Source: Mizuhopecten yessoensis (lineage: Eukaryota). Taken from it: DNA of 64,000 bases. The stretch's first letter is position 1. Each line of letters opens with the position of its first letter. Below are positions 1,767 to 62,500 of this stretch, piece after piece. The notes beneath the pieces were generated by a model. The model was not told the origin of the DNA and ran no database searches. It saw nothing but the letters and a program-made list of their open reading frames with translations. Made by a program: the position numbers and the translations under genes. Location of the stretch: positions 28,278 to 92,277 of the forward strand of contig NW_018407568.1 in the NCBI RefSeq assembly GCF_002113885.1, given 5' to 3'.

Positions 1767-2180
1767 ATGGCAACTCAACTAAGACCGATTGCCCGGCACC
1801 AGGTTCCAGACTGGTTTACAAATAGCCACACAATTTCCACAAATGCGGAAAGACAAAGAGATGCTTCTCACCAGGTTCGACAAGAAAGTCGGTTTTTACG
1901 AAATGAAACTGACAACCAAACAAAGTGGGATCAGCATGCAAACAACACCCGGTTAGGTGACCGTATCGATGATATCAGGAAATGGAAGGAGATTTTAGAA
2001 AGGACACTAGCTGAATTAGATAAAGAAATTGGAGATCTGTCAGATGCTAAAGAAATGACAGAGCATGCACTTGAAGCTAAGAACCTTCCCTCAGATGTAG
2101 CTATTGAATGTCTTACTCTCAGAGAGGGAAGACAGGGCATTGATGTTGTTCAAGACGAGGCTGAAAATCAACTCCATAAG
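1767..2180 (+). CDS. TEKT2: TEKT2 coding exon 1
   Basis: MATQLRP...NQLHK, then donor GTGAGT. Confidence 0.95.
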
Positions 2181-8292: not shown

Positions 8293-8543
8293 TCAGTACA
8301 TCGGAGGCCTATAGCTGCCTCCCCTGCCACCCCTCATGATGCGCGTGCCACGTGGTGTTGGTGCCCGAGGCCTGTTGTAACCTCTGTGTCCGCGGGGATG
8401 CTGCATAATTCCCCTCGTCTGTCCTGCCCCCCGTACACTGCCCCGCCCCCTAAGGTGCTGTACTGGCTGGGAGAGGGACACTGTGGTCTGGATCGGCATT
8501 CCCGTCTGCTCCCATATAATCGGCTGAATCTTTTTCGCTTTCC
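8293..8543 (-). CDS. TPR: TPR terminal coding exon (RG-rich tail)
   Basis: aacag|(G)KAKKIQPIIWEQ...RGGRGGSYRPPMY*. Confidence 0.85.
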
Positions 8544-11500: not shown

Positions 11501-14500
11501 GTTAATAGCTCTCCTTAACCCTTTCACCACTGTAGACCAAAATGGACTCATCCAGATCAACGCATGGTAGAGTCTACTAAAGTTACATAGGGGTGAAAGG
11601 GTTAACATCACACAGTGTGACTGTGTTTTTTTTTAAATTATTTGTTTTAGTTGTTTTTTTATAATTATTATTGAAACTGATTACCCCAATTTATTCACTA
11701 CATGTAGGCTAAACAGGCTTTAATACAAAGAGGATTTCAGGCAATATTAGCAGAAATCAGCACTGATGGTGACACCATTTACATTATCAAAGTGGGAACA
11801 AATTGTGAGTGAGTTGTGTCTACCTGTAGGAGCCTGGTGAACAGGATTGGTGGGTACACTGTGTCCCTGTTCTTCCTCTAACTGGGACAAATCCATCTGA
11901 GTATCATCCATTCCTAGGGCTGAAATAAATAAACACTCACCTTGTAGTGAACAATCCTGAGATAAAATTGATAATGTTGAGACTTTCATTCCATCTCTTG
12001 AGAATATTTTTTTACTTTAAAACTGTATTAGAAAACCAGTTTTTATCGTCATGTTGGATACAGGACAATTCTACAGGATAACAAGATAATGTATTACCCA
12101 AATTTTATGATTGTAGCCATATGTTGGTCAGGGGTATTCGTTAATTCTCTGAAAAAAGTGCCTCCCCCTCTGTTACGGTTAATTCTGAAACAACCCTCAA
12201 GTATATTTGTACTACTAGTACGAGTGTGTTTGTGTACCTTCCTGGGACTCGAGTTGGCCGAGGTCGTGGTGGGCGATGGCCTCTGTGTGACTGGTGAAGG
12301 TGAACCTCTGGTGGGGGATCTGGGGAGAACTGTAACACAACAACACGACACTGAAGAGAAGTGGACAATTTAAAGGGTCAGACCGAAATTCAAACCAGGG
12401 ACCACAAACTCTAGATAGAGCATCTACCTAACTACACTTCCTGCTCTGTTGTCACTTTTCTGCCGTTGCAAAATAAATTGTATACTTTTTTGGGTAGATC
12501 ATGATAAGTATAATCAATATAATAATTTTCACGAAAAACACAGAAATATCAGAAGAAATTTTTGATTTTGCTATTAACAAACTAAATTTTACTTCTGGGT
12601 TCAACTAGAATGGCATATAATAGTTCAAAAGCTAAAAGCCACATGGTTAAAATGAAAGCAATGCAGCAGCTTGTCCAGATTTGCCATACCTGACAGCCTC
12701 TGCAAATCCTCCATCACCTCTGTTGGGGACAAACAGTGTTGGAGTACTGGGCACGATACAGTCCTCTCCATCCTCAAACCCTCCGGCTTGTCCCTGCAAA
12801 AATAGCACACAACTCTCCACATCACCTCAAATACACAGTAAATCAACCTTCATCACAGCTTAATAATTCTTTTCCGTGAATGTTATTCTGGAATTCTTCA
12901 GAAACCAAACTGCAACGATATCCTCTAATAATTATTGTAAAATCTAAGCCTCGTGTTTGTCAACTTAAGAATCTCCCCCCCCTCGGGTTGAGATCCCCCT
13001 ATCTCACCCCCAAGGGGGTGAAAGATTTTATTAATCTCACACCTCACTCACCCCCAGTACAAATGCTGTCAGATGTTCCTCAGTCAACCATAGACTGGAC
13101 TGATATAGGTTATTATACATCTCACACCTCACTCACCCCCAGTACCTCACTCAACCCCCAGTACCTCACTCAATCCCAGTACCCTCACTCACCCCCAGTA
13201 CAAATGCTGTCAGATGGTCCTCAGTCAACCATAGACTGGACTGATATAGGTTATAACACATCTCACACCTCACTCACCCCCAGTACAAATGCTGTCAGAT
13301 GGTCCTCAGTCAACCATAGACTGGACTGATATAGGTTATTAAACATCTCACACCTCACTCACCCCCAGTACCTCACTCACCCCCAGTACCCTCACTCACC
13401 CCCAGTACCTCACTCCCCCCCAGTACCTCACTCACCCCCCAGTACCTCACTCCCCCCCCAGTACCTCACTCACCCCCAGTACAAATGCTGTCAGATGTTC
13501 CTCAGTCAACCATATACTGGACTGATATAGGTTATTACACATCTCACACCTCACTCACCCCCCAGTACCTCACCCACCCCCAGTACAAATGCTGTCAGAT
13601 GTTCCTCAGTCAACCATAGACTGGACTGATATAGGTTATTATACATCTCACACCTCACTCACCCCCAGTACCTCACTCAACCCCAGTACCCTCACTCACC
13701 CCCAGTACCTCACTCACCCCCAGTACCCTCACTCACCCCCAGTACCTCACTCACCCCCAGTACCTCACTCACCCCCAGTACCTCACTCACCCCAAGTACC
13801 TCACTCACCCCCAGAACCTCACCCACCCCCAGTACCTCACTCACCCCCAGTACAAATGGTGCAAGCTGTGTACGCGTGACAGACATCTGGCGCTCCATGG
13901 CATGGAACGGTAGCTGTGAGCGCTGGCTAACTGGCGTCTGTACAGAGGGCGCTACCACTTGTGGCACAGGCTGCACCTCCGGCTCCTGTGGCTCCATCTG
14001 GTTGTCATTATCCTCGTCATCTTGAAGTTTGAAGTTAAAAACAGTTTTTTAAGCATCTAGTTAAATAATTGGCTTCACAAAGGAAATAAAATAGATAACA
14101 GAAAGAGGTGTTTGTATGAATCAATAAAATGAAAACATAATGGTTTCATTTATCAACACTGCAAGAGGCTTACATACATTGTATTAAACTGTACATGTGA
14201 TGACCTACAATGTATCAACCCCCTATATATGATAACCTACCATGGTTACTAGATCTTAAACCCAATGTGACAATGCCATTGTCTTCCTCCAGCCCAGCCT
14301 CCTGTGTTGACCTATGACCTCTGTAATGACCTATTACCTTGTGATATGACCTACTGACCTACAATGACCACTTCATCGTCTCCCTCATCTCCAGGGCTGT
14401 GCATTTCCCCAGGCTGTGTGTCTGTCTGGTACTCATCTTCCCCCTCTTCAGCGTGTCCCTCTGGTAACTAGACAAAAATAATCACAGCTAATTAATAGAT

Positions 14501-17500
14501 GCATTAAAAACATTATTAGACAAAATAAATACAGGTCATCAAAAAAAATATTAACAGATATTTGGAAAAAGGAGGCAAAGCTAATTGAACAAAAAACACC
14601 AGCTAATTAGACATAACAAACAGTAGAGTTGCCAATAATGTCTTTTATCGGTGCTACATTTGTTAAACATATTTTGAAAATACCTATACTGCAAAAACAT
14701 CCATTTCAGATACTTGTGTTAATTTACCAAGGAATAACAATAAAATATTCCAAGATTTGAGTCAAAACCATCTGTGATATGAAATTGGGAGAATTGACCT
14801 TCTAAATAGCAAATGATATTGTACAACAGATTTTTAGGTGAGTGTACTTCTTAAACACTCTGTCTACACATACACCCGACACACTGTCTACACATACACA
14901 CGACACCTTCTCTACACATTCACACAACACACTGTCTACACATACACACGACACCTTGTCTACACATACAAACGACACCTTGTCTACACATACACACAAC
15001 ACACTGCTTACACATACACACAACACACTGTCTACACATACACAGGACACCTTGTCTACACATACACACGACACCTTGTGTACACATACACACAACACAC
15101 TATCTACACAAACAAACGACACCTTGTCTACACATACACACAACACACTGCTTACACATACACACAACACACTGTCTACACATACACATGACACCTTGTC
15201 TACACATTCACACAACCCATGGTCTACACATACACACAACACCTTGTCTACACAAACAAACGACACCTTGTCTACACATACACATGACACACTGTCTACA
15301 CATACACACGACACCTTGTCTACATATACACACAACACATTGTCTACACATACACACAACCCACTGTCTACACATAAACACAACACACTGTCTACACATA
15401 CACAGGACACCTTGTCTACACAAACAAACGACACCTTGTCTACATATACACACAACACACTGTCTACACAAACAAACGACACCTTGTCTACACATACACA
15501 CAACACACTGTCTAAACATACACACAACACATTGTCTACACATACACACAACAACACATTGTACATATACGCACCTCCTCATAGTCATCATCTTGTATTG
15601 GTTCATCATCGTCTTCTTCCTCGTCCTCATCGTAATCACCCATTTCTTCATTATATCCTTCATTATCATCATCATCATCGTAATCTTCCGCATCCTCATC
15701 ATCTTCCTCATCGCTCTCCACAACGATGACTGCATCATCATCATCATCATCTGCCTCCTCCACTTCAGTCTCCTCTTCTATCATTTCCTGTGTCATTTCA
15801 AAGAAAAATGAGAGTACAACATGAGAGTACAACAGGTGATGAATTGTCTGTTGGTGAATTATTTAGGGAGAATTCTTGTAAAACTTTTTCTACTTACACA
15901 TCCCGCCAATTTGTTACGTTATGATTCATTCTTACTTTACATATGAAATCCACTTGACCTTTAATTTTGATTTTGTACTTTATAACAAATCATGTCTTTA
16001 TACGTTATTTTTCTTCTATCTTTCGAGACAAATTGTCAAATACAAAAATATATATATATATATTCCCCCCCGCCTTGTCCTTGTCTACTATCAACAGAAA
16101 TCAGATTGTTATCAGATACTCTTCCTTAATACTGGGCACATACCTGAGTATCAAAGCACACGGTGGCCTGACTTTCGTAGGCCTGGTCCAGTGACGACTC
16201 AAAAATCTATAAATGAAGGAGACAGAGGTGAAACTTGACATGACGACAATAGGTATGATTTAAATTGTAGGTTGTGAATTCTGAATTTTAAGAAGCAATA
16301 TTATTGAGTTCCTATTGTGTAGAACTGTCAAGAAATTTGTAGGGAATAGTAAGTGAATATGTCCCCGGGTGTCTTACCTGTGTGGGTAAACTGTCTGACG
16401 GAACCTCTGACCCCGTAACCTCGGTATCCTGGGTAGCCGTGCCTCCCTGTTCGGGAATGGGCGTTGTGTTGGCATGCTCATCAGTAACAGTGATAGATGG
16501 GAGTGCCTGCTGGTCCTGTAACAGGAGGAGACAACTCTTGATGATTTATATAGTAATCTAAACATGACAACTGACCTCTAGAAGCCTAAATCAGTCAGCA
16601 ATAGTAGACACATACCAATATTTAGTAGCAATTTTTTATAAGGGCTGTATCAGAAATAACCATGGGTGGGAGGCACTTTATAGGAGACCCCACCACCAAT
16701 TAAATATTAAACCCCACCGCCAATAAAATATTTAACCCCGCCACCAATTAAATATTAAACCCCATCACCATTTAAATATTAATCCCCACCGCCAATTAAA
16801 TATTAAACCCCACCGCCAATTAAATATTAAACCCTGCGACCAATTAAATATTAAACCCCACCTTCAATTAAATATTAAACCCAATCACCATTTAAATATT
16901 AAAGTAATTTAATATTTGAAATGGTTGGCAGATCTAATTAAACCCACCACCTATAATATATAAACTCAGGTGCCTCCCAGCTCCCCTAGATAAGTAATGA
17001 TGGAATATTCACAATATATATTGAGAGTACATTGACACACATTCAACCATCAAAGTTAAAACTCAACAGTAAATGTTATTAATATTGTCAACCTCTACTT
17101 AACATATTTTTCATGTTTGCTTCTCTTCACACTGTGTTCTACTGTTACCGACTCACTCCCACATCAACCGTGACAACGTCATGTTTGACACATCATTGAT
17201 ACTCGAGGGGTTACGCTCACTTTCGCTCTCCAACTCTGGGAATAAGTCATACCAAAATTGAAGGCTCACGGCTAGCTACTTGATCGGTCTTGGGTAAAAA
17301 AAGCTCTGACCAATCACTAGGCTGATCCCTGTTCTTTGAAGATTAGAGAGGAGCGACACACAACTTTAAAGCCAGTCAATTTTACATTTAAGCAACCGAC
17401 AGATTCTTTTTCATGTACATCAAAGGATCAAACTAGTCTCCTCGTCTCATCCACAGGGTGACGCCCACCAAGCCTTCATTTTTGTTATGACATATTCCCG

Positions 17501-20500
17501 GGGTGCAGAGAGCGAAAGTGAGCGTAACCCCTCGAGTATTGAGGATGTGTTGGACAGGAAGTATTACTTACAATGGCTATGCATTCAACAACATAACACT
17601 GACTAACACCATACTTCACATAATGATACTTTACTCACTTACTTACCAGAATAATGTTCTACATCAAGAGACTTAGTTTACCTTTATATAAGAGATACAA
17701 ATATCAATAACTCGTCATACTTACAGGAGATACTCTCGTTCTTTTGGCGTCCGTCTCCTCCTCATGTCTGCCAAAAAAGAAGAAATAATCAAAAATTATT
17801 AACTAAATAAAAGAATAAGATTTCCAGGACATTCTCGATACAATTATTTCACCAAATAGCATACCTATATATACATGGTAGACATTTGGTTTAAACAATA
17901 TTTTATTTCATTCATCATATATAATAACTACACAGGTAAATAGGAATAGAATCTGGCAACAAGATTGTAAATCTTATATATATAAAGCCATCTCCCTTGA
18001 AATGCAATTGCATAAAAGAAGTTCTTCAACATGTAGTTAATTAATACACATAAATTGTTTAAACCAACAGTTTGAGAAGCACGTGCGGTTTATAGCCGAC
18101 CAATGAGATTGTTTCGAAAGCGTAAGGCGTGATGGGGTTAGTTTGTTAGGCATTCTAGCTTTTGGTCAGCTCAGGAACGGACCGTTTGAATTCAGCATAA
18201 TTCATTGTAATATAAGGGAAATAATAGCTTGTAACTCTTGAATGTATGAAGATCGTGTTCATACTCCATGTTTAGAAATACCAGCAAGGTAAACCTGAAG
18301 CATTGGGCTGGTACACCTCCTGTAACCCTAAAATGGGTTTTCAGGTTGGGTGGCAGGCTTGGTTTATTTAGATAAACATGGTCTGAGAGGGGGAGATGTC
18401 GAGTGTGGGTTACACGTATGATGTATATATGTGCATAAAACAACGATTTGAAATAAACGCCGACTCATTCGTTCCTAAAGGCCGAGCAGCTAATTGCATA
18501 TAAGGAGTTGTTTTTTTTTTATACGGAGTAGTAAGTATATAGAGGACTTTAACCTTTCAGGGTTCAAATTAATATGTGAAGTTCCTATGGTGTTCATTCT
18601 AGCTTGGTCGATATTTAATCTAAGCAGTTTCTTTCAACATGCTACTAAGTCAAAATGTTATAACACTGATATTTGTTTGCTATGGCCGAGTTAGACGATT
18701 GACCATTTATTTCAGACATATAAGAGAGTCAGTAATTCAGAGTCATCTATATGTGCGGCATTTCTGTCGCATAGACATTGGAAATTGGGGGCCAAATGTA
18801 CATTTCTACAGGAATCCCAGAAGGGCACCTCCAAATATAATCACTGTACACCTGATCCTATATTGGAGATTATTTTAGGAGGCAGATAGAGTAGGTTTGA
18901 CTGTTTCCAAATCTCACCCTTCCATGTCGTCACGTGAACGTTTCAGTTGAGTGCCTGTTGCTTGGGAGTCGCAGGCTGCTGAAGAAGATGGCTGTGGATC
19001 TACGGCAGCCATCTCTGTGTGACTACTCACTACCTCTGTCTCCGTGACAACCACTGTTGGTTCTGTAAAAAAAAAGAAAATTATTCATACAGGATTGCTT
19101 AGAGTAATTGTGTTGTTTGATTTTGTCAAGACAACTAAGTAACTGTTAACCAATAAAAACGTTAAAGTGTTGACTTGACTAGACCCAGTGATGCTGATCT
19201 CAACTTAGGGACACTCGGATGTGCTTAAAGAGACCTTCCCTTACCGGAGCAGTGTCTTTTTTGTTTATCTTTTTCCAAACAGTTTTATTGCTTGGACCTG
19301 ATTTGTTCATTTAAGAAGTACAACTCACCCAGTGATTTGGTGCCATTTTATGGTGAGCCTTGATTAGATAGAGCCAGGATCATAAACTATATTTTACGAA
19401 TGCAATTTTTTTTTAAAGATCTTATTTGAATTTAGAAATTGAACATTGGCGTGAAGGGTTTAGCCCACTGAAATAGAAGAAACGGAATATATCCTATCAT
19501 GTAATACAGCTTTCTAATCAAAGCTCTCTACAACCTTAGAGAGATAGATGCTTACCTGTGCCAGATTCCACCTGGGGAGTGACCCTTTGAACATGCTGGG
19601 TGGGGCGGGCCAGGGCAGGAGACAGCTGGGACACTTGGGAGCTCTCTGTAGGAGCACAAACACACAAGAGTATTGTATGATCAGTCAGTATCAGTTAAGA
19701 GTATTGTATGATCAGTCAGTAGCAGTTAAGAGTATTGCATGATCAGTTAGTATCAGTTAAGACAATTCTGATAGTGATCAGAACATAATCATATAGAGTA
19801 GTAATAGGATTGCTGACATTTAGAGTAGCTGTTGTAATGAAATCATGCATATCTATGGATGGACAATCACTATTATAGGTATAGCCTAGGCTTGACATGG
19901 AGCATTGCGGTTGGGGCAGGTGCAACCCCATGTCAGACAAGTTAAATGTCTCCATCAAATTTCAAAAAGATTAGTCATTTGGATTCGAGGTTATCTCTGA
20001 AAACAAAAGTTTAGACGGACGGACAGACTTAACCACAAAGAAAGGTCAAAGAAAAATTCCCAACCTACCCTGGTTGTCCTGAACAGATACTGTGGTTGGC
20101 ATGACAGTAGCCGTCGGTGTGGGGCCACTACTGGGTGCCACTGTTGTTGGGGCAATGGCCATCGGTCGAATACTGGCGGTGGCTTTAGTGGCAGCAGACT
20201 GTGGCTGAATCTGAGCAGGCTGGGTCCGCGGTGTTACAGGTACCGGGGACGCCATCGGCCGGATGTTGGCCGTCTTTGGAGCCTCAGAGGTAGGCGCACT
20301 TCAGAGAAAAAAGTCAACATTCATATGAATTCAGCTGTTGTCTTATGTCATCTTTTTACTTTACCTTTTAAAATTCATTCATTGTAATCATATAACTTTT
20401 AAGATTCATCTGAGCTGTATTAATCGAAGCACAGCCAAATCAACTTGTCCATTGAATGTCATCTTGTGCATTTTTGGCACCTACCTGTAATTGATCATAC

Positions 20501-23500
20501 ACTTTACTGGTCATTTGTTTGATGAAGGTGACAGAGTACATATCAAACTATCATCAAAACATCAACCATAAACATTTCACAGGTTGTGCTGTAGGAACTT
20601 GAATTTAATATATATAAATATATATACCAACCCGAAGAAAATATTTCGAAACTTCAAAATTTGATCAATAGATTTAAACTGAAAATGTGGTAACAATTGA
20701 TCCAAAAATCTTGAAATCAAGTAGGATTGAGCAAGGTAAATGAACTGATTAAACAAAAGCTACTGACCGACATGACCACAATAACTTACCTGACACGCTC
20801 CACCGTGACAGTGGCAGAGGGTCGAGCCACCTGTGGTTGTGGCGGAACTGACTTGGTCTGCTGGGACTCGATCTGCTTCTGTAACTGTTGTATCTGTTAA
20901 ACAATATAAAATAAATTCATAAATTCTAAAGAAACTTGAGAATATTTTTTTGTTGAATTGCCATCTCTATTTAATTGAAACTGACTTTCACATTTCAGCT
21001 GGTTTGTATACAATAACATAGCAAGTCTGCAACTCCAGCAGATTCTATTTAGAAATCTCCAAAGAAATAAAGAGAAAAGGCATCAAAATTTCATAATAGC
21101 ACTCTGCAGGGTACTAAATTTCAATTCAATAGTATTTCAATGCTTCTTTTTCTGCTATTGACTATCTCGTTTTGTTTTTCAAGCCAATATACCAACTCCT
21201 TTCATAATGACAACACTTTCACGAGAAAGCACCCAGGGGTGGCATATCCCCAGGGAAAAGTCACATTTGTTCTGAAGTTATCATCTGGAAAAGTGTAACC
21301 AACCAGGATTCTATTTTTTAGCAACACTGACCTTGCAATTGACTTCTACTGGACCATGCCCAAAATCGATAAGGATCTTTGCATCCACTAGAGCAACGTT
21401 AACACAGACACTAAGTTTGAAGATTTTATGATCATTTGTTCTCAAATTATCATCCGAAAAGTGCGATGGACAGCCACCATGCCTGACCAGTCTATTTGTT
21501 CAGTGGGAGAGGGGGACTAACCTTGGTCTGTAGCTCGGTGGCGATGGACAGCCCCCCTGCCTGACCAGTCTATTTGGTCAGTGGGAGTGGGGGACTAACC
21601 TCTGTAGTTCGGTGGCGATGGACAGCCACCATGCCTGACCAGTCTATTTGTTCAGTGGGAGTGGGGGACTGACCTTGGTCTGTAGCTCGGTGGCGATGGA
21701 CACCCCCCCTGCCTGACCAGTCTATTTGGTCAGTGGGAGTGGGGGGCTAACCTTGGTCTGTAGCTCGGTGGCGATGGCCCCCCTGCCTGACCAGTCTATT
21801 TGTTCAGTGGGGGTGGGGGACTAACCTTGGTCTGTAGGTCGGTGGCGATGGACAGCCCCCCTGCCTGACCAGTCTATTTGGTCAGTGGGAGTGGGGGGCT
21901 AACCTTGTTCTGTAGCACGGTGGCGATGGACAGCCACCATGCCTGACCAGTATATTTGTTCAGAGGGAGAGGGGGACTAACCTTGGTCTGTAGTTAGGTG
22001 GCGATGGACAGCCACCATGCCTGACCAGTATATTTGTTCAGAGGGAGAGGGGGACTAACCTTGGTCTGTAGTTAGGTGGCGATGGACAGCCACCATGCCT
22101 GACCAGTCTATTTGTTCAGTGGGAGTGGGGGACTGACCTTGGTCTGTAGCTCGGTGGCGATGGACAGTCACCCTGCCTGACCAGTCTATTTGGTCAGTGG
22201 GAGTGGGGGACTAAACTTGGTCTGTAGCTCGGTGGCGATGGACAGCCCCCCTGCCTGACCAGTGTATTTGGTCAGTGGGAGTGGGGGACTAACCTCTGTA
22301 GTTGGGTGGCGATGGACAGCCACCATGCCTGACCAGTATATTTGTTCAGAGGGAGAGGGGGACTAACCTTGGTCTGTAGTTAGGTGGCGATGGACAGCCA
22401 CCATGCCTGACCAGTATATTTGTTCAGTGGGAGTGGGGGACTAACATTGGTCTGTAGTTCGGTGGCGATGGACAGCCACCATGCCTGACCAGTATATTTG
22501 TTCAGTGGGAGGGGGGGACTAACATTGGTCTGTAGTTCGGTGGCGATGGACAGCCGCCCTGCCTGACCAGTCTATTTGGTCAGTGGGGGACTAACCTTGG
22601 TCTGTAGCTCGGGGGCGATGGACAGCCACCCTGCCTGACCAGTCTGTTTGGTCAGTGGGAGTGGGGGACTAACCTCTGTAGTTCGGTGGCGGTGGACAGC
22701 CACCCTGCCTGACCAGTCTATTTGTTCAGTGGGAGTGGGGGCCTAACCTTGGTCTGTAGCTCGGTGGCGATGGACACCCTGCCTGACCAGTCTATTTGGT
22801 CAGTGGGGGACTAACCTTGGTCTGTAGCTCGGTGGCGATGGACAGCCACCCTGCCTGACCAGTGTATTTGGTCAGGGGGAGTGGGGGACTAACCTTGGTC
22901 TGTAGTTCGCTGGCGATGGACAGCCAAGCCACCTGACCAGTCTATTTGGTCAGTGGGAGTTGGGGACTAACCTTGGTCTGTAGCTCGGTGGCGATGGACA
23001 GCCACCCTGCCTGACCAGTCCATTTGGTCAGTGGGAGTGGGGGACTAACCTTGGTCTGTAGCTCGGTGTTTTCCTCCTGGGCTCTCTGTAACACAGTTTG
23101 TACCTCAGACACATTGTTAATGGCAGAATCCTTTGTAGCTCGGGTTTCTGCCAGTTCTTTCTCCATTTTGGACAGTTTCTCTTCCACCTCTGATCGTACT
23201 GCCAACACTCTCTGCTCTACATCACCTAAGTGTTTGAAATCAAGGTCTGACATCAGCAGCGGCAAATTTTGCTACAACACAGCTGAACCAGACTAGTGAG
23301 ACAAGTTTATGACCTGCCAACACCCGTGGTCTCTGTTGATAACTTTGTTTTGTATGATTTCAAAGCTTGAAAAATGGGATACTTAAAACAATCAATTACA
23401 AGAATAAGGGATCTAAATCATGTCTTTCACTGAACTTACTTAACTATTTTTTATTTAATAACTTACCATAGAAATCATAAATATATGCAAACAAGTTTTT

Positions 23501-50500: not shown

Positions 50501-53500
50501 TAAGGATGTTTAAACATCCTGCATGAGACATTAAGGATGTTTAAACATCCTGCATGAGACATTAAGGATGTTTCCCTGCATGAGACATTAAGGATGTTTC
50601 CCTGCATGAGACATTAAGGATGTTTACCTGCATGAGACATTAAGGATGTTTAAACATCCTGCATGAGACATTAAGGATGCTTCCCTGTTTGAGACATTAA
50701 GGATGCTTACCTGTGTGAGACATTAAGGATGTTTATCTGCGTGAGACATGAAGGATGTTTACCTGTGTGAGCCTACATACTTATTGTAGATCTGCCAAAC
50801 ACAAGTACATACTCATTGTAGCTCTGTCAAACACAAGTACATACTGATTGTAGATCTGTCAAACACAGGGACATACTTATTGTAGATCTGTCAAACGCAA
50901 GTACATACTCATTGTAGAACTGTCAAACACAGGTACATACTTATTTTAGATCTGTCAAACACAAGTACATTCTCATTGTAGATCTGTCAAACACAAGGAC
51001 ATACTCATTGTAGATCTGTAAAACAAAAGTAAATACTAATTGTAGATCTGTCAAACACAAGGACATACTCATTGTAGATCTGTTAAACATAAGTACATAC
51101 TCATTGTAGATCTTTCAATCACAGGTACATACTCATTGTAGATCTGTTAAACACAGGTACATACTCATTGTAGAACTGTCAAACACAGGTACATACTTAT
51201 TTTAGATCTGTCAAACACAAGTACATTCTCATTGTAGATCTGTCAAACACAAGTACAGACTTATTGTAGATCTGTCAAACACAAGTACATACTCATTGTA
51301 GCTCTGTCAAACACAAGTACATACTCATTGTAGCTCTGTCAAACACAAGTACATACTGATTGTAGATCTGTCAAACACAGGAACATACTAATTGTAGATC
51401 AGTCAAACACAGGTACATACTCATTGTTAATCTGTCAAACACAGGTACATACTTATTGTAAATCTGTCAAACACAAGTACATACTGATTGTAGATCTGTC
51501 AAACACAAGTACAAACTCATTGTAGATCTGTCAAACGCAAGTACATACTCATTGTAGATCTGTCAAACATAAGTACATACACATTGTAAATCTGTCAAAC
51601 ATAAGTACATAAGACATGAAGGATAGCTTACTTACCTGTGTGAAACATTAAGGATGTTTACCTGTGTGAGACATTAAGGATGTTTACCTGCATGAGACAT
51701 TAAGGATGTTTACCTGCATGAGACATTAAGGATGTTTACCTGTGTGAGACATTAAGGATGCTTACCTGTGTGAGACATTAAGAATGCTTACCTGTGTGAG
51801 ACATTAAGGATGTTTATCTGCGTGAGATATTAAGGATGTTTACCTGTGAGAGACATTAAGGATGCTTACATGTGTGAGACATTAAAGATGTTTACCTGTG
51901 TGAGACATTAATGATGCTTACCTGTGTGAGACATTAAGGATGCTTACCTGTGTGAGACATTAAGGATGTTTATCTGCATGAGACATTAAGGATGGTTACC
52001 TGTGTGAGACATTAAGGATGTTTACCAGTGTGAGACATTAAGGATGTTTACCTGCATGAGACATTAAGGATGTTTACCTGCGTGAAACATAAACGATACT
52101 TACCTGTGTGAGAGACATGCCAGACTTCAGTACTTTACTGGTCACAGAAGCAGTAGGAAACATACTCTCTACCTGGTCTTCACTGGCAACTGAAACAGAC
52201 ACACAACTTGTAGATGTTAAATACTTTACAATAAATGTATTACAAATCTCATAATGACTAGCCATAACATAGTGTTGAAATGAAAGCATGAAAACAAGGC
52301 TATAGTTGAAACGGTTGAACCTGTGAAGAAAACGACAGGCACAGATCTGACCCGAGGCTGACTTCAGGAATATTCTGCTTGTGAAGATTGAGGGGTCGAG
52401 ACGCACCGAAACTAAAATGCTGACTATTGCTAGTTTGCGTTATTTCTTTCTTAAACAATGTCAAGCCATATGTAGTTTTTAAGATACGTTATGTAATTTA
52501 GTGGACGCATGAAAGAAGGCTTTAATATTCTTGATACATTGTTATTTATTCTCCCAAACTGTGCATTTTTAGCTCTGCTTAAAGAATGGTACAAGTGCGG
52601 TCGTTTATCGTTGAATATTTCTGCGCCACCTGTAACGCTTCAACTGGGATATGCGAATGTAACCCAACACTGCAGAAAACTGAAACATGTTTTGATGGAA
52701 GAGCACTTACTCCTGTTTTTGGTCTGTTCCAGAAGATCATTGGCGCTGACCAGTTCTTGTCTCAGCTTCTCAATTGTCTCCTCTGTAGAGAAAAGTAGCC
52801 ACAATATACAAACAAAAAGACACAATTTACCAAAGAAAGAGGTCTGCAATAGAATCAAACTTTTTTCAATCAGTTAAATCAATTTCCGTCAATAATCTAA
52901 TCCCAATATTTTTTTTGTCATTCTATGCAGTATTCCGATCCATAAACATGATATCTTTAGTATGATGTTCCCAATTAACCTCATTTGAATTTCCATTGAA
53001 AAACATGCTTCAAATGATAAATATTCCATGGCCATCCCCAAACCCAACAAATCAGTCCATCATAAATCCAAAGTTAGAGGTGCAGATTGAAAAAAACAAG
53101 TTTCAAATATTAGTACCTACTATTGCCCAAGTGTTTTACATCTAGATGGGCAATTTTTGTAACTCCATATTATAAAATTGAACAGATTTTACTGCATACC
53201 ACTAAACCAGGTCTGATATGAAATAGGATCACTCTCAAATGTTTACACAGTTCTGTAAGTTACGACAAAACTGCAATTTCATTGTGAACATTACCTCTGC
53301 TTTCTATATCTACTTGGGAGTGTTTCGCTCCCTCCTCCTTCAAATTTTCAAGTTCAGTATGAGCTGTAATATAATTCAGACACAAGATCATTCACTTGAA
53401 CCCAACAAAATACTTGTCTATATACCACATGTAGTTGTCTATACAGTGGCCAACAACATCAGACATTTTTCAGATAATATCTCTTCCCTGTAGTCTTTAA

Positions 53501-56500
53501 CAATTGACAAATAACTTTTAACTAAATGATTGTTTTAGTCATGACGGTAAATTAATTTGAATTTCACATAAAAGGACATATAATCTGACAAATAATCAGA
53601 ACTAAAATGATAAACCAAATAATTTAAAATAGTATCTGCTGTTTTGTATCAGTAAACATCAAAATTAATTCAGCATAAGTTTCAAATTCCTAACAAACTA
53701 AATTTTTTGTCATCGAAAATGGTCATCTTCATAAAAATAAATATTTCATTAATAGTCATTATATTACTGGTAGACAGAATGAGATAGAGACCAAGCTGAT
53801 GATACTATTAAACTTGTCAAGGTATATTGGTAACAACTCTATAAATAGCTTGAATCCTGTCATACCATTGGCTGCCTCCTTCAATAGTGTCCTTAGTTCC
53901 TCTACAGCGCTAGTCAACTCCTTCACTTTGCTTTCTGCCTCGTCCTTAGATGTCTGTAACAATATTTAACTGATAAATACACAATGAACACCAACAATAA
54001 CAGTAAACAGAGAAACTCAACACACAGCAGCATCGAAAACAAATTTGAAACAAGCCATTCGGATTGATATGTCTCACCTGTGCCCCACTTTGACCATCAA
54101 TACACATGTCAAGTTTGGTTGGTGTAGCACTTATAGTTTCAGAGAAACTAATTTAAACACAACAAGAGGCCCATGGGCCTTAACGGTCACCTGAGTCTAT
54201 AGTATTTATTTTTGTTGTTGAAATATGTACCAATTTGAGTAAAAAATAGTATAATGTTAACTTAACTTTGTCAGGACCATGAGCTGATCATTCCTAGACC
54301 AATTTTAAGTGAGATCGGCCTATTAGAACTTAGTAGCAAAATAGCGGCCATGGCAGCCAAATTGTATTTCTGATTGACCCGAAAAATAACAACACTTTGT
54401 CAGGACCATGAGGCGATCATTCCTACCAACTTTCAGTTCAATCGGCCCAGCAGAACTTGACTTTAAGTTTGAAATGTAAAATGTTAACGGACTACGGACG
54501 ACGGACGACGGACGACGGACGACGACGGACGAAAACGGATAGCAATAGGTCACTTGAGCTAAAGCTCAGGTGACCTAAAAACATAATGTTGATGGAGATG
54601 CTGACAAAGTCAATGGACGATGACAGGTATAGGCCGCATCCAGCATTTGATACATGGGATGATATATACTACCTCAGATGCATCTATGGACCAAGTTTGG
54701 TTGGTCTAGCACTTATACTTTCAGTGAAACTAACTTCAATGCAAAAACTTAAGCATTGGTCTTGCTTCCGCTACTTCGTCACGGCGAGACAAAAATACAT
54801 GAGAAGAAACACAAAATTGGGCAATTGTAAAAGAACAATATCTTCCATAAGATTCATCAGTTTGGAAATAAGTGATATCAAAGTTTTACTTTATACACAC
54901 ACTACGTACATTATTTGTGTTGTACACTTTTGTATTTGTTTGTGTATAAAGGTAAAATTAAAAAGGACTATTAAAGTAATAACTAACCTTGTAAAGGTCT
55001 GGGAGATGACCCTTACCAGACTTTTACAATTACTAACCATGTATGGGTCTATTAAGCGACCACTTGCCAGACTTTTACAATTACCAACCTTGTATGGGTC
55101 TATATATAAGGCAACCCCTATAAGTAACACATTTTTAATATTAACTTACCTTGTACAGGTCTATTTGACGACTCTTAGCCAGACTTTTACAACTTACCTT
55201 GTACAGGTCTATTAGACGACTCTTAGCCAGACTCTTACCATAACTTACCTTGTACAGGTCTATTAGACGACTCTTAGCCTGCCTGTAACAAAAACTTACC
55301 TTGTACAGGTCTATTAGGCGACCCCTAGCCAGACTGTAACAATAACTTACCTTGTACAGGTCTATTAGCCGCCTCTTAGCCTGCCTGTAACAAAAACTTA
55401 CCTTGTACAGGTCTATTAGACGATTCTTAGCCTGCCTGTAACAATAACTTACCTTGTACAGGGCTATTAGACGACTCTTAGCCTGCCTGTAACAATAGCT
55501 TACCTTGTACCGGTCTATTAGACGACTCTTAGCCAGACTGTAACAATAACTTACCTGGTACAGGTCTATTAGACGACTCTTAGCCAGACTTTAACAATAA
55601 CTGACCTTGTACAGGTCTATTAAGTGACCCCTAGCCAGACTGTAACAGTAACTAACCTTGTACAGGTCTATTAGACGACTCTTAGCCAGACTGTAACAAT
55701 AACTTACCTGGAAAAGGTCTATTAGACGACTCTTAGCCAGACTTTTACCATATCTTGCCTTGTACAGGTCTATTAGACGCCTCTTAGCCAGACTTTTACC
55801 ATATCTTGCCTTGTACAGGTCTATTAGACGCCTCTTAGCCAGACTTTTACCATATCTTGCCTTGTACAGGTCTATTAGACGCCTCTTAGCCAGACTGTAA
55901 CAGTAACTAACCTTGTACAGGTCTATTAGACGACTCTTAGCCAGACTTTTACAACTTACCTTGTACAGGTCTATTAGAGGACTCTTAGCCAGACTTTAAC
56001 AATAACTTACCTTGTACAGGTCTATTAAGCGACCCCTAGCCAGACTTTTACAATAACTTACCTTGTACAGGTCTATTAGACGACTCTTAGCCAGACTTTT
56101 ACAATAACTTACCTTGTACAGGTCTATTAGACGACCCTTAGCCAGACTTTTACAATAACTTACCTTGTACAGGTCTATTAGACGACCCCTAGCCAGACTT
56201 TTACAATAACTTACCTTGTACAGGTCTATTAGACGACCCCTAGCCAGACTTTTACAATAACTTACCTTGTACAGGTCTATTAGACGACCCCTAGCCAGAC
56301 TTTTACAATAACTTACCTTGTACAGGTCTATTAGACGACCCCTAGCCAGACTTTTACAATAACTTACCTTGTACAGGTCTATTAGACGACCCCTAGCCAG
56401 ACTTTTACAATAACTTACCTTGTACAGGTCTATTAGACGACCCCTAGCCAGACTTTTACAATAACTTACCTTGTACAGGTCTATTAGACGACCCCTAGCC

Positions 56501-59500
56501 AGACTTTTACAATAACTTACCTTGTACAGGTCTATTAGACGACCCCTAGCCAGACTTTTACAATAACTTACCTTGTACAGGTCTATTAGACGACCCCTAG
56601 CCAGACTTTTACAATAACTTACCTTGTACAGGTCTATTAGACGACCCCTAGCCAGACTTTTACAATAACTTACCTTGTACAGGTCTATTAGACGACTCCT
56701 AGCCAGACTTTTACAATAACTTACCTTGTACAGGTCTATTAGACGACCCCTAGCCAGACTTTTACAATAACTTACCTTGTACAGGTCTATTAGACGACCC
56801 CTAGCCAGACTTTTACAATAACTTACCTTGTACAGGTCTATTAGACGACCCCTAGCCAGACTTTTACAATAACTTACCTTGTACAGGTCTATTAGACGAC
56901 CCCTAGCCAGACTTTTACAATAACTTACCTTGTACAGGTCTATTAGACGACCCCTAGCCAGACTTTTACAATAACTTACCTTGTACAGGTCTATTAGACG
57001 ACCCCTAGCCAGACTTTTACAATAACTTACCTTGTACAGGTCTATTAGACGACCCCTAGCCAGACTTTTACAATAACTTACCTTGTACAGGTCTATTAGA
57101 CGACCCCTAGCCAGACTTTTACAATAACTTACCTTGTACAGGTCTATTAGACGACCCCTAGCCAGACTTTTACAATAACTTACCTTGTACAGGTCTATTA
57201 GACGACCCCTAGCCAGACTTTTACAATAACTTACCTTGTACAGGTCTATTAGACGACCCCTAGCCAGACTTTTACAATAACTTACCTTGTACAGGTCTAT
57301 TAGACGACCCCTAGCCAGACTTTTACAATAACTTACCTTGTACAGGTCTATTAGACGACCCCTAGCCAGACTTTTACAATAACTTACCTTGTACAGGTCT
57401 ATTAGACGACCCCTAGCCAGACTTTTACAATAACTTACCTTGTACAGGTCTATTAGACGACCCCTAGCCAGACTTTTACAATAACTTACCTTGTACAGGT
57501 CTATTAGACGACCCCTAGCCAGACTTTTACAATAACTTACCTTGTACAGGTCTATTAGACGACCCCTAGCCAGACTTTTACAATAACTTACCTTGTACAG
57601 GTCTATTAGACGACCCCTAGCCAGACTTTTACAATAACTTACCTTGTACAGGTCTATTAGACGACCCCTAGCCAGACTTTTACAATAACTTACCTTGTAC
57701 AGGTCTATTAGACGACCCCTAGCCAGACTTTTACAATAACTTACCTTGTACAGGTCTATTAGACGACCCCTAGCCAGACTTTTACAATAACTTACCTTGT
57801 ACAGGTCTATTAGACGACCCCTAGCCAGACTTTTACAATAACTTACCTTGTACAGGTCTATTAGACGACCCCTAGCCAGACTTTTACAATAACTTACCTT
57901 GTACAGGTCTATTAGACGACCCCTAGCCAGACTTTTACAATAACTTACCTTGTACAGGTCTATTAGACGACCCCTAGCCAGACTTTTACAATAACTTACC
58001 TTGTACAGGTCTATTAGACGACCCCTAGCCAGACTTTTACAATAACTTACCTTGTACAGGTCTATTAGACGACCCCTAGCCAGACTTTTACAATAACTTA
58101 CCTTGTACAGGTCTATTAGACGACTCTTAGCCAGACTTTTACAATAACTTACCTTGTACAGGTCTATTAGACGACTCTTAGCCAGACTTTTACAATAACT
58201 AACCTTGTACAGGTCTATTAGACGACTCTTTGCCTGCAGTTCCTGGTTAAATTGGTCCTCTGACTGAGCCATTCCATTTCTGGCCTGTAAATGTAAGCGG
58301 TTTGTTAACTTAGAGTGAAGAAATATTCAATAATGTGGGAAAAAAAATACCATGTTCCATTTTTCAAATGTATTCCGGGATTAAATATTTTTGCTAGCAA
58401 GACCTTTGAGATAACCTTAATTTCTACACCTATAAATTTTGTAACCTTGAAATGTCCTCAGTATTGTTATTGATGTATATGACTATAATTATTTTACAGT
58501 TTTTCCCACAAGACCATAGTTATTTTACAACCCTTGGCAGGTATGAGATTACAGTCTTCAGCAATCAGATCTAAAGGAAAGATACCATAAAAACTAGAAA
58601 GACAGGAAAATTCCTCAATCTACCAGCATAAACATTATTTTCTTCTATTTCAGATATAAATCATTTTGAAACTGAAAACACATCTTTAAAAGAATTCCTC
58701 TGAGATTAGGAAGACTCATATTACTGCTTCAGTTTCTGAACAGGATTTTAATCATCCATGCATCCTTCATTTTTTGTTTTGTTTTGGGGTTTTTTTGTGT
58801 ACGAAATTAAAGTTATCTTACATGTACATCAGAAGTTCTTGTAATAGATTGTAACTGTATTATCTAACATCCTTCTGTACAAAACTAATATATTTTCCTC
58901 AGTTTCTGTTTTAGACAAAAATTAATTACCCTGTAATATCACTCTGTATTATTACCCTTTGATATCGTTCTGTATTATTACCCTGTAATATCGTTCTATA
59001 TTATTACCTGTATTATCGTTCTGTATTATTACCCTGTAATATCGTTCTGTATTATTACCTGTATTATCATTCTGTATTATTACCCTGTAACATCGTTCTA
59101 TATTATTACCTGTATTATCGATCTGTATTATTACCCTGTAATACTGTTCTGTATTATTACCCTGTAACATCGTTCTATATTATTACCTGTATTATCGATC
59201 TGTATTATTACCCTGTAATAATGTTCTGTATTATTTCCCTGTAATATCGTTTTGTATTATTACCCTGTAATATCGTTCTGTACTATTACCCTGTAATATC
59301 GTTCTATATTATTACATGTATTATCGTTCTGTATTATCGTTCTGTATTATTACACTGTAATATCGTTCTATATTATTACATGTATTATCGTTCTGTATTA
59401 TTACACTGTAATATCGTTCTATATTATTACATGTATTATCGTTCTGTATTATTACCTGTATTATCGTTCTGTATTATTACCCTTTAATATCGTTCTGTAT

Positions 59501-62500
59501 TATTACCCTGTAATATTGTTCTGTATTATTACCCTGTAATATCGTTCTGTATTATTACCCTGTAATATCATTCTGTATTATTACCCTGTAATATCGTTCT
59601 GTATTATTACCCTGTAATATCGTTCTGTACTATTACCCTGTAATATCGTTTTGTATTATTACCCTGTAATATCGTTTTGTATTATTACCCTGTAATATCG
59701 TTCTGTATTATTACCCTGTTCTGTCGTTCTGTATTATTACCCTGTAATATCGTTCTGTATTATTACCCTGTAATAATACAGAACGATATTACCCTGTAAT
59801 ATCGTTCTGTACTATTACCCTGAATTATCGTTTTGTATTATTACCCTGTAATATCGTTCTGTATTATTACCCTGTAATGTCGTTCTGTATTATTACCCTG
59901 TATTATCGTTCTGTATTATTACCTGTAATATCGTTCTGTATTATTACCCTGTAATATCGTTCTGTATAAGACTAATTATCTTGCATGCTTTAATTGATGT
60001 ATGAGATTTTAGTTTACATCCTACAGTGCCTGTATGAGAGTAGGATTACCTTAATTTTACAGTTCCTATACCAAACAATAATATGAATGATCTTACATCC
60101 TTCAGTTTCTGTATAAGGCCGTCTATCATGGTGGCTATACCACACACTAATATAAATTATCTTACATCCTTCAGTTTCTGTATAAGGTTGTCTATCATGG
60201 TGGCTATACCACACACTAATATAAATTATCTTACATCCTTCAGTTTCTGTATAAGGCCATCTATCTTGTTGGCCTGTTCTCCCTGGGATGATTTCAGAGC
60301 CGCAACTGTTTCCTGGAGGAACGTGTTCTCTCCTATCTTTTCCTCCAACTTGCTCTGAGTTTCCAGAAGACTGGCTGTCTGTAATGGATCAAGAGTAAGC
60401 TCAACACTTTTAACAAGAAGTTGCAAACAATTTTTTGTTTCAAAAATTCAAATAGGATAGATTTGATGAATTTGATATGTTCAGAAAACTGATCTGATTT
60501 TTTTTCATTTCTTGCATACATTTTTGAGATTTTCTTTAATTAGTGAGCATGCAAGTTCTACAGGATGAGATATTTCTTTTTTCAAATCATAGTTATACAA
60601 ATGCTTCTTTAGGACTGAGTATTCAATAAAACCATCAATATATATATAAATCTGATTAAATCCAAAATATTTATAAAATCTTGTAAAATATTTCAAGTTA
60701 AAAAATCATCTGTAATACCTTACAATGCTGTTATATTATCTGTTAACCTGCTATAATACAGTAAGGTTCAATGATATATGTCCATCTTTATGGTTGATGT
60801 CAGTCACAGACTATTTTAGTGAAGAAACCTTTTATGACTTACCTGTTCCTTTTTGACGTTTAGGAGCTCATTGGTTTTCTCAAACAGTTGTTTGTCCAGC
60901 AGATCTAGCTGTCTCTGTATCTGACTCTTCTCCTGTTCCAGTCGTTTGTTCTGGAACTGTTCAACACAACATCTAACTGATAATCATTTCAGTGTTTGAG
61001 TTAGCGTTTTATGTTAATGATTGAAGTTATTTCTCTATGCTGAACATAACAGTTGTACAGTGATCCTTGACAGAAATGTCTAAGCAAAGTTAAGTTTGTC
61101 AAAGGCTAGTGATCATGAGAGCTATGTCGGTGTCATTGCCATCCTTGATACTCCATGGGGTTACACTCATTTTTGCTCTCTGCACCCCTGGAATGTGTCA
61201 TAACAAAATTGAAGGCTCAGTGTGCACCACCGTGTGGATGAGACAAGACTAGTTTGATCCTTTGATGTACATGAAAAGAAACTGTCGGTCGGGTAACGGT
61301 AAAATTGATCATTTATTGGCTTTGAAGTCGGGTGTCGCTCCTCTGTAGTCTTCAAAGGACAGATACCAGCCTTAGCGATTGGTCAAGGTTTTCACCCCAA
61401 GACCAATCAATTAGCAAGTCGTGTGCCTTCAATTTAGCTATGACATTTCCAGGGGTGCAGAGAGCAAAAGTGAACTTAACCACTGGCGTATAGAGGATGT
61501 GTTGTTATGCGATCGGGACTTGTAGTACAAGGAAAGATTCCGTTTGAATTACTGACATTTCAGTCAGATGTAAAACATATAAAAAAAAAAGAATAACTGC
61601 CTGAATAGGGGTATAGCAACAAAAGCTCACCAACAATTTCAAACAAAGTATAAGCCATACCTCCAAGGTGACACTCTGGTTCTGTACCTCCGCCAGTTTG
61701 GCCTGCGCCTCACATTTCTCTGTGTTGGCTCTCGACACTTTGTCCGTCAACTCCTTCCACTCTTCTGTGATTAAAAAAATAAAATGGGTGTGTTATTCAA
61801 GATAATAACACACCGAAATGCCTCACAAGATAACTGCAGCCACTGTCATACAATGATTCAACCTGTAGCAGCAGACATTTTAACAAGTCGAATTTGAAAG
61901 CTTAATTGAAGAATACACTTTAACAGCTAAATTATACTGGAACATACAGTATACAAAAACTTACTTATCTCATCAAGTGAAAACAATTTTTGTAGCACAT
62001 TTTAAATATCCATAGTTGACTGGCACATTGAATATCAAGTTTACCATTTATTCTATCAATTTCTCTGTTCCTCTTCTCAAGTAAGACACTTAAATCTCTC
62101 TTGTCCAACTCCAGCTGTTCATTTGATTTACTGAGGCGGAGCTGTTGAAACAAATGGATGGTTTTACAAATTGTCAATTCAAAGACTTAATAGTATCAGA
62201 ATAAATTATTATTGACAGTTTGTAGGATGTTGTTTCAATCATAAAAACAATTCAATATCAACTTCATTTCATAAACAATAACAAAGTAATGTTTTACCTG
62301 TGATCAGAAATCATAAATTTNAGGAAAGAAGTTGTTTAAAGTAAAAAGTTGACGCCGGACGGACGGACACCGCACCATAACATAAGCTCACTTGCCCTTC
62401 GGGCAGGTGCGCTAAAAAAAACATTGTCACCGCAGTATTGCCATACTTGTGAAATATACATGGTATAAATTCAACAGGAAACTATTATATCCCCCAATAT

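What the first reader, a model, noticed from the sequence alone, without database searches (positions are those of the whole stretch)
13040..60266. Systematic tandem amplification of TPR's own splice junctions (splice-site satellites)
Seen: seven arrays with unrelated sequences each have a unit straddling a real exon/intron boundary of this gene. Donors are at 13845 (18 bp), 23050 (78 bp), 52104 (26 bp), 58204 (51 bp) and 60235 (69 bp); acceptors are at 23910 (39 bp) and 49597 (32 bp). Each unit carries about 9-32 nt of exon plus the splice signal, and together they give well over 150 extra splice sites. They are a large share of all tandem arrays in the window, although a boundary occurs only about every 450 bp. 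Established: tandem duplication across a splice site is a proposed route to intron/exon gain and alternative splicing, normally described as rare single events. Inference: a lineage-specific process may nucleate repeat expansion at splice sites (co-transcriptional pausing, R-loops or RNA-templated repair), and the spliceosome must select one site among dozens of near-identical ones. I do not know of a description of this as a genome-wide system, but I cannot search.
Basis: partly seen in the sequence, partly recalled or inferred. Interest (0 to 1): 0.9.

Follow-up and report, generated by a model that had tools for sequence, protein, structure and literature searches.

The report
Splice-site "mirage" repeats in scallop TPR
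Seven runs of tandem repeats in the scallop TPR gene are copies of the gene's own exon-intron borders; this kind of repeat is already known from lancelet and a few human genes, and what is added here is that in scallop and oyster TPR such repeats pile up at intron starts (donors) two to seven times more often than chance, but not at intron ends.

Summary
Observation confirmed. The window is Yesso scallop (Mizuhopecten yessoensis) TPR, minus strand, 61 introns. All seven named junctions are real and each is copied into a minisatellite; a strict count gives 111 spare GT and 45 spare AG sites. This is a described class: amphioxus 'mirages' (PMC3087553) and donor-spanning minisatellites in human F7, CBS, LMNB2, IFI6, PDGF (PMC1557585), where the outermost site is normally used. 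Enrichment in this gene alone is modest: 7 of 25 arrays against 3.2-4.2 expected (p 0.03-0.09). It is donor-only and not scallop-specific. In TPR orthologues, donor arrays were Ylistrum 7 (2.7-3.8 expected), oyster Saccostrea 11 (1.6-1.9, p about 1e-7), Pinctada 2, Mytilus 0, Patella 0; acceptors were at chance. All sit at old, conserved intron positions, so none made an intron. Best reading (inferred): ordinary minisatellite growth, filtered by splicing (first donor wins) and anchored by the conserved exon end. A splicing-coupled mutational bias is not excluded. The scan noted such arrays before in other pieces of this genome.

The parts
8296..64000 (-). TPR (nucleoprotein TPR, nuclear basket) coding region of Mizuhopecten yessoensis, 62 exons and 61 introns in the window; the first coding exon lies beyond 64000
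   Evidence: 100% match to P0001/P0153 named TPR-like [M. yessoensis]; exact exon map
60066..60273 (-). 69-bp donor array, 3 copies; real donor 60235, copies at 60166 and 60097, relic echoes at 60018 and 58869; unit keeps frame but holds a stop
54978..58236 (-). 51-bp donor array, about 63 copies; real donor 58204 (AAG|GTTAGT); 51 copies read AAG|GTAAGT; the first 43 GT copies are in frame and stop-free (17 aa each)
51632..52113 (-). 26-bp donor array (real donor 52104), first block; frameshifting unit
50774..51611 (-). 32-bp acceptor-derived array, inner block (the 26+32 block is duplicated within the intron)
50223..50765 (-). 26-bp donor-derived array, second block
49581..50193 (-). 32-bp acceptor array ending in the real acceptor 49597; 44 copies over both blocks, 43 with AG
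23901..24030 (-). 39-bp acceptor array, 3.3 copies; real acceptor 23910, copies at 23949 and 23988; unit holds stops
21463..23068 (-). 78-bp donor array, about 21 copies; real donor 23050; only the second copy is in frame and stop-free
13040..13853 (-). composite donor array (18-bp units nested in 85/104-bp units); real donor 13845; 6 in-frame stop-free copies
58925..59967 (-). 26-bp array inside the 60235 intron; it begins in an exon-end-like relic and is flanked by degenerate donor echoes; probably a secondary array seeded in an old junction copy (inference; not counted among the seven)
34640..35113 (.). two assembly gaps (34640-34772, 34986-35113) inside the intron between donor 35635 and acceptor 34482; left as they are

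Best explanation
These are 'mirage' minisatellites: by-products of ordinary tandem duplication in a minisatellite-rich genome, kept and concentrated at donors by two filters. Step 1 (shown): a 18-78 bp segment holding an exon end plus donor, or an acceptor plus exon start, was duplicated in place and amplified by the usual repeat turnover; the outermost copy remains the working junction, so the protein is unchanged. Step 2 (from F7 work; inferred for scallop): among tandem donors the most upstream is chosen, and that is the right one, so donor arrays cost little. Among tandem acceptors the copies met first are the wrong ones, so acceptor arrays are purged more often. Step 3 (inferred): the first unit is held by selection on coding sequence and the GT, so a junction array cannot be deleted whole, lasts longer and grows larger than an array in free intron. 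Anchoring raises both kinds; the splicing filter cancels the gain at acceptors; the net result is a donor-only excess.
For: All 7 junctions are real and protein collinearity with orthologues is kept. Arrays make up 33% of intron bases here and 55% in Ylistrum, and most do not touch a junction. The donor excess repeats in orthologues fetched blind (20 vs 7.6-8.1 expected, p about 5e-5), acceptors 4 vs the same expectation; this holds over six TRF and threshold settings. Array starts peak in the last 30 nt of exons (22, against 8, 4, 2, 3 in the next bins) while array ends are flat around acceptors (4, 6, 5, 4, 3). The excess is in long arrays: 18 of 23 donor arrays have 5 or more copies against 33 of 67 others (p 0.027). 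Persistence: the Ylistrum array at the 60235-orthologous donor matches the Mizuhopecten exon end (2 of 19 mismatches) better than its own present exon end (7 of 19), and outgroups back the older state at the last codon. Donors 60235, 58204 and 52104 carry arrays in both scallops (p 0.01-0.03 on that count). Array donors are slightly stronger than other donors (9.1 vs 7.9 bits, p 0.013), and in 17 of 21 long ladders at most one copy beats the real donor. Literature: PMC1557585, PMC3087553.
Against: No RNA reads could be laid, so use of the outermost site rests on the annotated protein and on conservation. Anchoring predicts some acceptor excess and none is seen, so the balance of two filters is assumed, not measured. 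The 51-bp array breaks the 'no stronger than the real donor' pattern (53 of 59 copies stronger). Mytilus and Patella have 20 and 10 arrays and no junction array, so repeat richness alone is not enough. The blind pooled signal rests largely on Saccostrea (without it p 0.02-0.27). With an exon-only probe the scallop-scallop sharing is not significant (p 0.28). One gene family only.
Confidence: 0.6

Rival explanations
1. A donor-specific mutational process (polymerase pausing or U1 binding at the exon end, R-loops, or repair templated by nascent RNA) seeds or expands tandem duplications at 5' splice sites in some bivalve lineages.
For: Sharp peak of array starts in the last 30 exon nt with no matching peak at acceptors; a further 8 arrays start 0-30 nt inside the intron without holding the donor; 11 of 28 arrays in Saccostrea, p about 1e-7; patchy distribution among species.
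Against: Low-copy arrays show little excess (7 donors vs about 4.5 expected over six species, by subtraction); selective filtering alone predicts donors above acceptors; no shared motif (AG|GT no commoner at array donors); no direct evidence of any such process.
Confidence: 0.2
2. Pure chance in a very repeat-rich genome: arrays fall anywhere and some hit junctions; the window was picked because it has many.
For: Window alone p 0.03-0.09 for both sides together, and 0.05-0.19 for donors under the loosest TRF setting; without Saccostrea the blind orthologues give p 0.02-0.27.
Against: Saccostrea 11 vs 1.6-1.9; donor:acceptor 25:6 over six species (binomial p 0.0009), a ratio that does not depend on the intron-length null.
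Confidence: 0.1
3. The arrays are functional: inner donors give alternative TPR isoforms (17-aa or 6-aa insertions, or a poison isoform) or tune splicing.
For: 5 of 7 units are multiples of 3; the 51-bp array offers 43 in-frame stop-free donors that are mostly stronger than the real one; RefSeq isoform X2 (P0001) starts with the reading of copy 3 of the 69-bp array, which suggests reads were aligned to that donor; neighbouring pseudo-sites are used in human CBS and IFI6 (PMC1557585).
Against: Two of the five frame-keeping units hold stops; unit length and position differ between species; in Ylistrum and Pinctada junction units are no more often multiples of 3 than other arrays; X2 may be a mis-mapping since copy 3 differs from the real exon end by one base in 31; insertions in TPR's coiled coil are not in any orthologue.
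Confidence: 0.07
4. Assembly artefact.
For: Scaffold with gaps; the core of the 51-bp array has 27 identical units in a row, so its copy number is unsure; no DNA reads could be laid.
Against: Copies carry ordered variants (72-94% matches); an independent assembly of another scallop genus has arrays at three of the same donors and one of the same acceptors; oyster has the same class.
Confidence: 0.03

Closest known systems
Amphioxus 'mirage' minisatellites (Adh3, Canestro et al. 2002 as cited in PMC3087553; globins BflGb6 and BflGb9, PMC3087553)
   Same: Minisatellite-like tandem duplication of an exon-intron boundary; both 5' and 3' boundaries; unit lengths in the same range (Adh3 10-72 bp); many but not all copies keep GT/AG; terminal copies differ from a homogenised core; several per gene.
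   Different: Here in bivalves; up to 63 copies; a measured donor-only excess over a null, which the paper I could read does not give. Length polymorphism and normal splicing were shown in amphioxus and not tested here.
Human donor-spanning VNTRs: F7 IVS7 (37 bp), CBS IVS13, LMNB2, IFI6 (6-16), PDGF intron 4 (PMC1557585)
   Same: First unit spans the exon-intron boundary so the donor is repeated down the intron; the most upstream site is the real one.
   Different: One per gene in human against 5-11 per gene in scallop and oyster TPR; the 51-bp array has inner donors of full consensus, the one condition that partly shifted splicing in the F7 constructs.
Intron gain by tandem duplication of a proto-splice site (Rogers model; Zhuo 2007 and Gao and Lynch 2009 as cited in PMC3087553; not read by me)
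   Same: Intragenic tandem duplication across AG|GT-like sites.
   Different: Those create a new intron from exonic repeats; here old introns are only lengthened and no new intron position appears.

Membership tests
Mirage minisatellites | Tandem repeat whose unit spans a real exon-intron boundary of the host gene | tested here: met
   7 of 7
Mirage minisatellites | Unit copied from the local junction, unrelated between arrays | tested here: met
   Exon-only probes echo in their own intron 7 vs 0.3 expected (donors) and 2 vs 0.2 (acceptors); distinct consensus units
Mirage minisatellites | Many but not all copies keep GT or AG | tested here: met
   59 of 62, 14 of 17, 16 of 17, 18 of 21, 43 of 44
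Mirage minisatellites | Normal splicing at the outermost (authentic) site | tested here: inconclusive
Mirage minisatellites | Copy-number instability between alleles or cells | not testable with these tools
Intron gain by tandem duplication | A new intron position absent from outgroups, made of the repeat | tested here: not met
   All seven junctions are at positions shared with Ylistrum and with at least two of Mytilus, Saccostrea, Pinctada, Patella
   Stronger in oyster than in this scallop; acceptors at chance in all species
   Only one gene in seven species could be examined; other windows of this genome carry like notes, unchecked by me

The most novel reading that the evidence does not exclude
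In scallops and oysters a transcription- or splicing-coupled process preferentially starts or expands tandem duplications at 5' splice sites across the genome, so that roughly one donor in ten is followed by a ladder of its own copies, some stronger than the real site and in frame.
Probability: 0.2. Interest if true: 0.75.

Novelty: new member of a known kind. Interest (0 to 1): 0.4.

Why it matters
The class is known, but only from case reports in amphioxus and human as far as my six paper searches reached. A measured, donor-only excess in scallop and oyster TPR (5, 7 and 11 of 61 donors), with none in mussel or limpet TPR, makes two questions testable with public data. First, does splicing bias where duplications arise or only which survive? 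Second, does 'first donor wins' hold in an invertebrate when dozens of perfect-consensus, in-frame donors follow a weaker real one (the 51-bp array)? It also warns that gene models in these genomes can take an inner copy for the junction (RefSeq X2 may be such a case).

Tried and rejected
I did not lay the long arrays because the tool turns long repeats away. I did not fetch the TPR locus of this species, to avoid looking up the gap letters. No Pecten or Argopecten TPR turned up. Locus look-ups failed for P0039, P0049, P0042, P0056 (not on record) and for Solemya and Potamilus (gene too long). Lingula TPR has almost no minisatellites and is uninformative. The original mirage paper (PMC117041) and Zhuo 2007 (PMC1783408) are not held. 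Rejected: intron gain (positions are ancient); AG|GT proto-splice motif as seed (14 of 23 vs 98 of 160, p 1.0); phase bias; chance likeness between exon ends and introns; TRF edge creep (result holds when 7 exon bases are required). PMC10078293 (human splicing-associated repeats) says nothing on junction-spanning units in the passages read.
Full report
Identity. One exon searched by reference (window 42187-42360, minus strand) matched P0001 at 100%, named nucleoprotein TPR-like isoform X2 of Mizuhopecten yessoensis. Its cluster holds a full-length 2367-aa form (P0153). Exact mapping of P0153 on the minus strand solves 62 exons and 61 GT-AG introns from 64000 down to 8296.

Gaps first. The N runs at 34640-34772 and 34986-35113 lie in the intron between donor 35635 and acceptor 34482. 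The flanking exons join in frame, the protein aligns without a gap to five other molluscs, and all six have an intron at this position. The gene is continuous across the gaps; none of the seven arrays is near them. The gaps were not filled or looked up.

Observation. All seven named junctions are in the exon map at the stated coordinates and TRF gives the stated periods. A junction-echo scan that does not use TRF finds echoes only in these six introns: 111 with GT and 45 with AG. Probes made of exon bases only echo in their own intron far above chance (7 vs 0.3 for donors), so the units are local copies. The exon share is 9-34 nt. In each case the real site is the outermost copy: first for donors, last for acceptors.

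Is it more than chance? Arrays cover a third of the intron bases. I collapsed each array to one unit and asked how often a unit of that length, placed at random, would hold a junction, either anywhere in the gene or within the same intron. For the window: 25 arrays (the duplicated 26/32 block counted once), 7 on junctions, 3.2-4.2 expected, p 0.03-0.09; donors 5 vs 1.6-2.1 (p 0.02-0.05), acceptors 2 vs 1.6-2.1. The window was chosen for this feature, so these p values flatter it. I therefore fetched TPR from other species blind. Donor-spanning arrays: Ylistrum balloti 7 (2.7-3.8 expected), Saccostrea echinata 11 (1.6-1.9; p about 1e-7), Pinctada 2 (1.2), Mytilus edulis 0 (0.8-1.2), Patella 0 (0.5-0.9); Lingula has hardly any minisatellites. 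Pooled over the five blind molluscs: donors 20 vs 7.6-8.1 (p 3e-5 to 6e-5), acceptors 4; this held over six settings, but without Saccostrea it is only p 0.02-0.27. Donor to acceptor is 25:6 over all six (p 0.0009). Array starts peak in the last 30 nt of the exon; array ends show no peak at acceptors. So the excess is real, donor-only, patchy among bivalves and not special to this scallop.

History. Every array junction is an old intron position shared across molluscs; no intron or exon was gained. Three of the five donor sites (60235, 58204, 52104) also carry arrays in Ylistrum, with other unit lengths (37, 30, 37 bp), the 49597 acceptor has an echo there and the 23050 donor a relic copy. The sharing is p 0.01-0.03 on the junction probe but p 0.28 on the exon-only probe, so it is suggestive only. 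The clearest sign of age: the Ylistrum array at the 60235-orthologous donor differs from the Mizuhopecten exon end at 2 of 19 bases and from its own exon end at 7 of 19, and three outgroups share the Mizuhopecten last codon. That array therefore predates several changes in its own exon. In the window the same intron holds degenerate donor echoes out to 58869 and a 26-bp array that starts in one of them. Donor arrays are more often long than other arrays (18 of 23 vs 33 of 67, p 0.027).

Splicing. I worked beside those places afterwards and have no read evidence. Indirect evidence: the annotated full-length protein uses the outermost site at all seven, and only that choice keeps collinearity with orthologues that lack arrays. 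Using the nearest decoy would shift the frame (26, 32 bp), hit a stop (69, 39 bp) or insert 17, 26 or 6 residues (51, 78, 18 bp). Array donors are a little stronger than others (p 0.013), and copies are mostly equal or weaker than the real site; the 51-bp array is the exception, with 53 of 59 copies stronger and 43 in frame before the first stop. RefSeq X2 begins with the reading of copy 3 of the 69-bp array, which is either minor real use or mis-mapping over a one-base difference.

Mechanism. Shown: local duplication across junctions, amplification, donor bias, persistence of at least one array. Inferred: the cause of the bias. In human F7 the most upstream of several identical donors is used and even stronger downstream copies do not compete short of a full consensus (PMC1557585). 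That makes donor ladders cheap, whereas for acceptors the copies met first are the wrong ones (my inference from general splicing knowledge). A junction array also has one end pinned by coding sequence and cannot be deleted whole. These two filters explain the data without a new process (0.6). A donor-coupled mutational bias remains possible (0.2), then chance (0.1), function (0.07) and artefact (0.03).

Prior art. [quoted passage not shown] Human F7, CBS, LMNB2, IFI6 and PDGF have the donor form (PMC1557585). The lead to 'mirages' and F7 came from earlier notes of this scan and from my own paper search in the same turn; I checked both papers. My searches found no paper on the pattern in bivalves or on a genome-wide count, but the library lacks most subscription journals. 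The scan has noted such arrays in at least eight other pieces of this genome; those are unchecked AI notes and I count them as leads only.

Verdict. Real, a new and dense example of a known kind; the new part is a donor-only excess shared by scallops and an oyster, from one gene family. Interest 0.4.

Noticed in passing
window 60097-60129 (-): RefSeq isoform X2 (P0001) starts with MIDGLIQKLKD, the reading of copy 3 of the 69-bp array, and is otherwise identical to residues 256-2367 of the full form: an annotation that uses an inner donor copy, real or mis-mapped.
   Followed up: partly
window 54978-58204 (-): Both end copies of the 51-bp array read GTTAGT while 51 inner copies read GTAAGT, the form Ylistrum has at its real donor; 43 copies are in frame and stop-free (758-aa ORF 55996-58272).
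   Followed up: partly
window 49581-52113 (-): The 2506-nt intron is almost wholly a donor array plus an acceptor array, duplicated as a block, so an acceptor array is followed by a donor array in mid-intron (possible pseudo-exon near 50770).
   Followed up: partly
window 14302-14360 (-): Degenerate 19-bp array that starts 2 nt inside the exon at donor 14359; a possible eighth, decayed donor array, not counted.
   Followed up: partly
window 25453-25494, 26276-26317, 26621-26662 (-): Three successive 42-nt phase-2 exons with similar peptides, an old exon-repeat region whose exon number varies among molluscs (Saccostrea has extra 63-nt exons; Ylistrum lacks the intron at c4130).
   Followed up: no
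window 23698-23748 (-); L001 47478-47528: A 24-bp two-copy repeat wholly inside the exon just before donor 23691, present in both scallops.
   Followed up: no
window 1767-4269 (+): Tektin-like gene tail to tail with TPR; the TPR-tektin neighbourhood is kept in Ylistrum, Saccostrea and Lingula, and an MR_MLE enolase-family gene lies head to head with TPR in four bivalves.
   Followed up: no
L001 16826-17536: In Ylistrum the donor-derived 30-bp array sits 1.2 kb downstream of the real donor, cut off from it by unique sequence.
   Followed up: partly
L003 (Saccostrea echinata TPR): 11 of 61 donors carry arrays (up to 72 copies) and no acceptor does: the strongest case seen.
   Followed up: yes
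L001 23093, 28969, 52543, 62564, 13807, 70954: Several long Ylistrum arrays start 6-34 nt inside the intron without holding the donor.
   Followed up: partly
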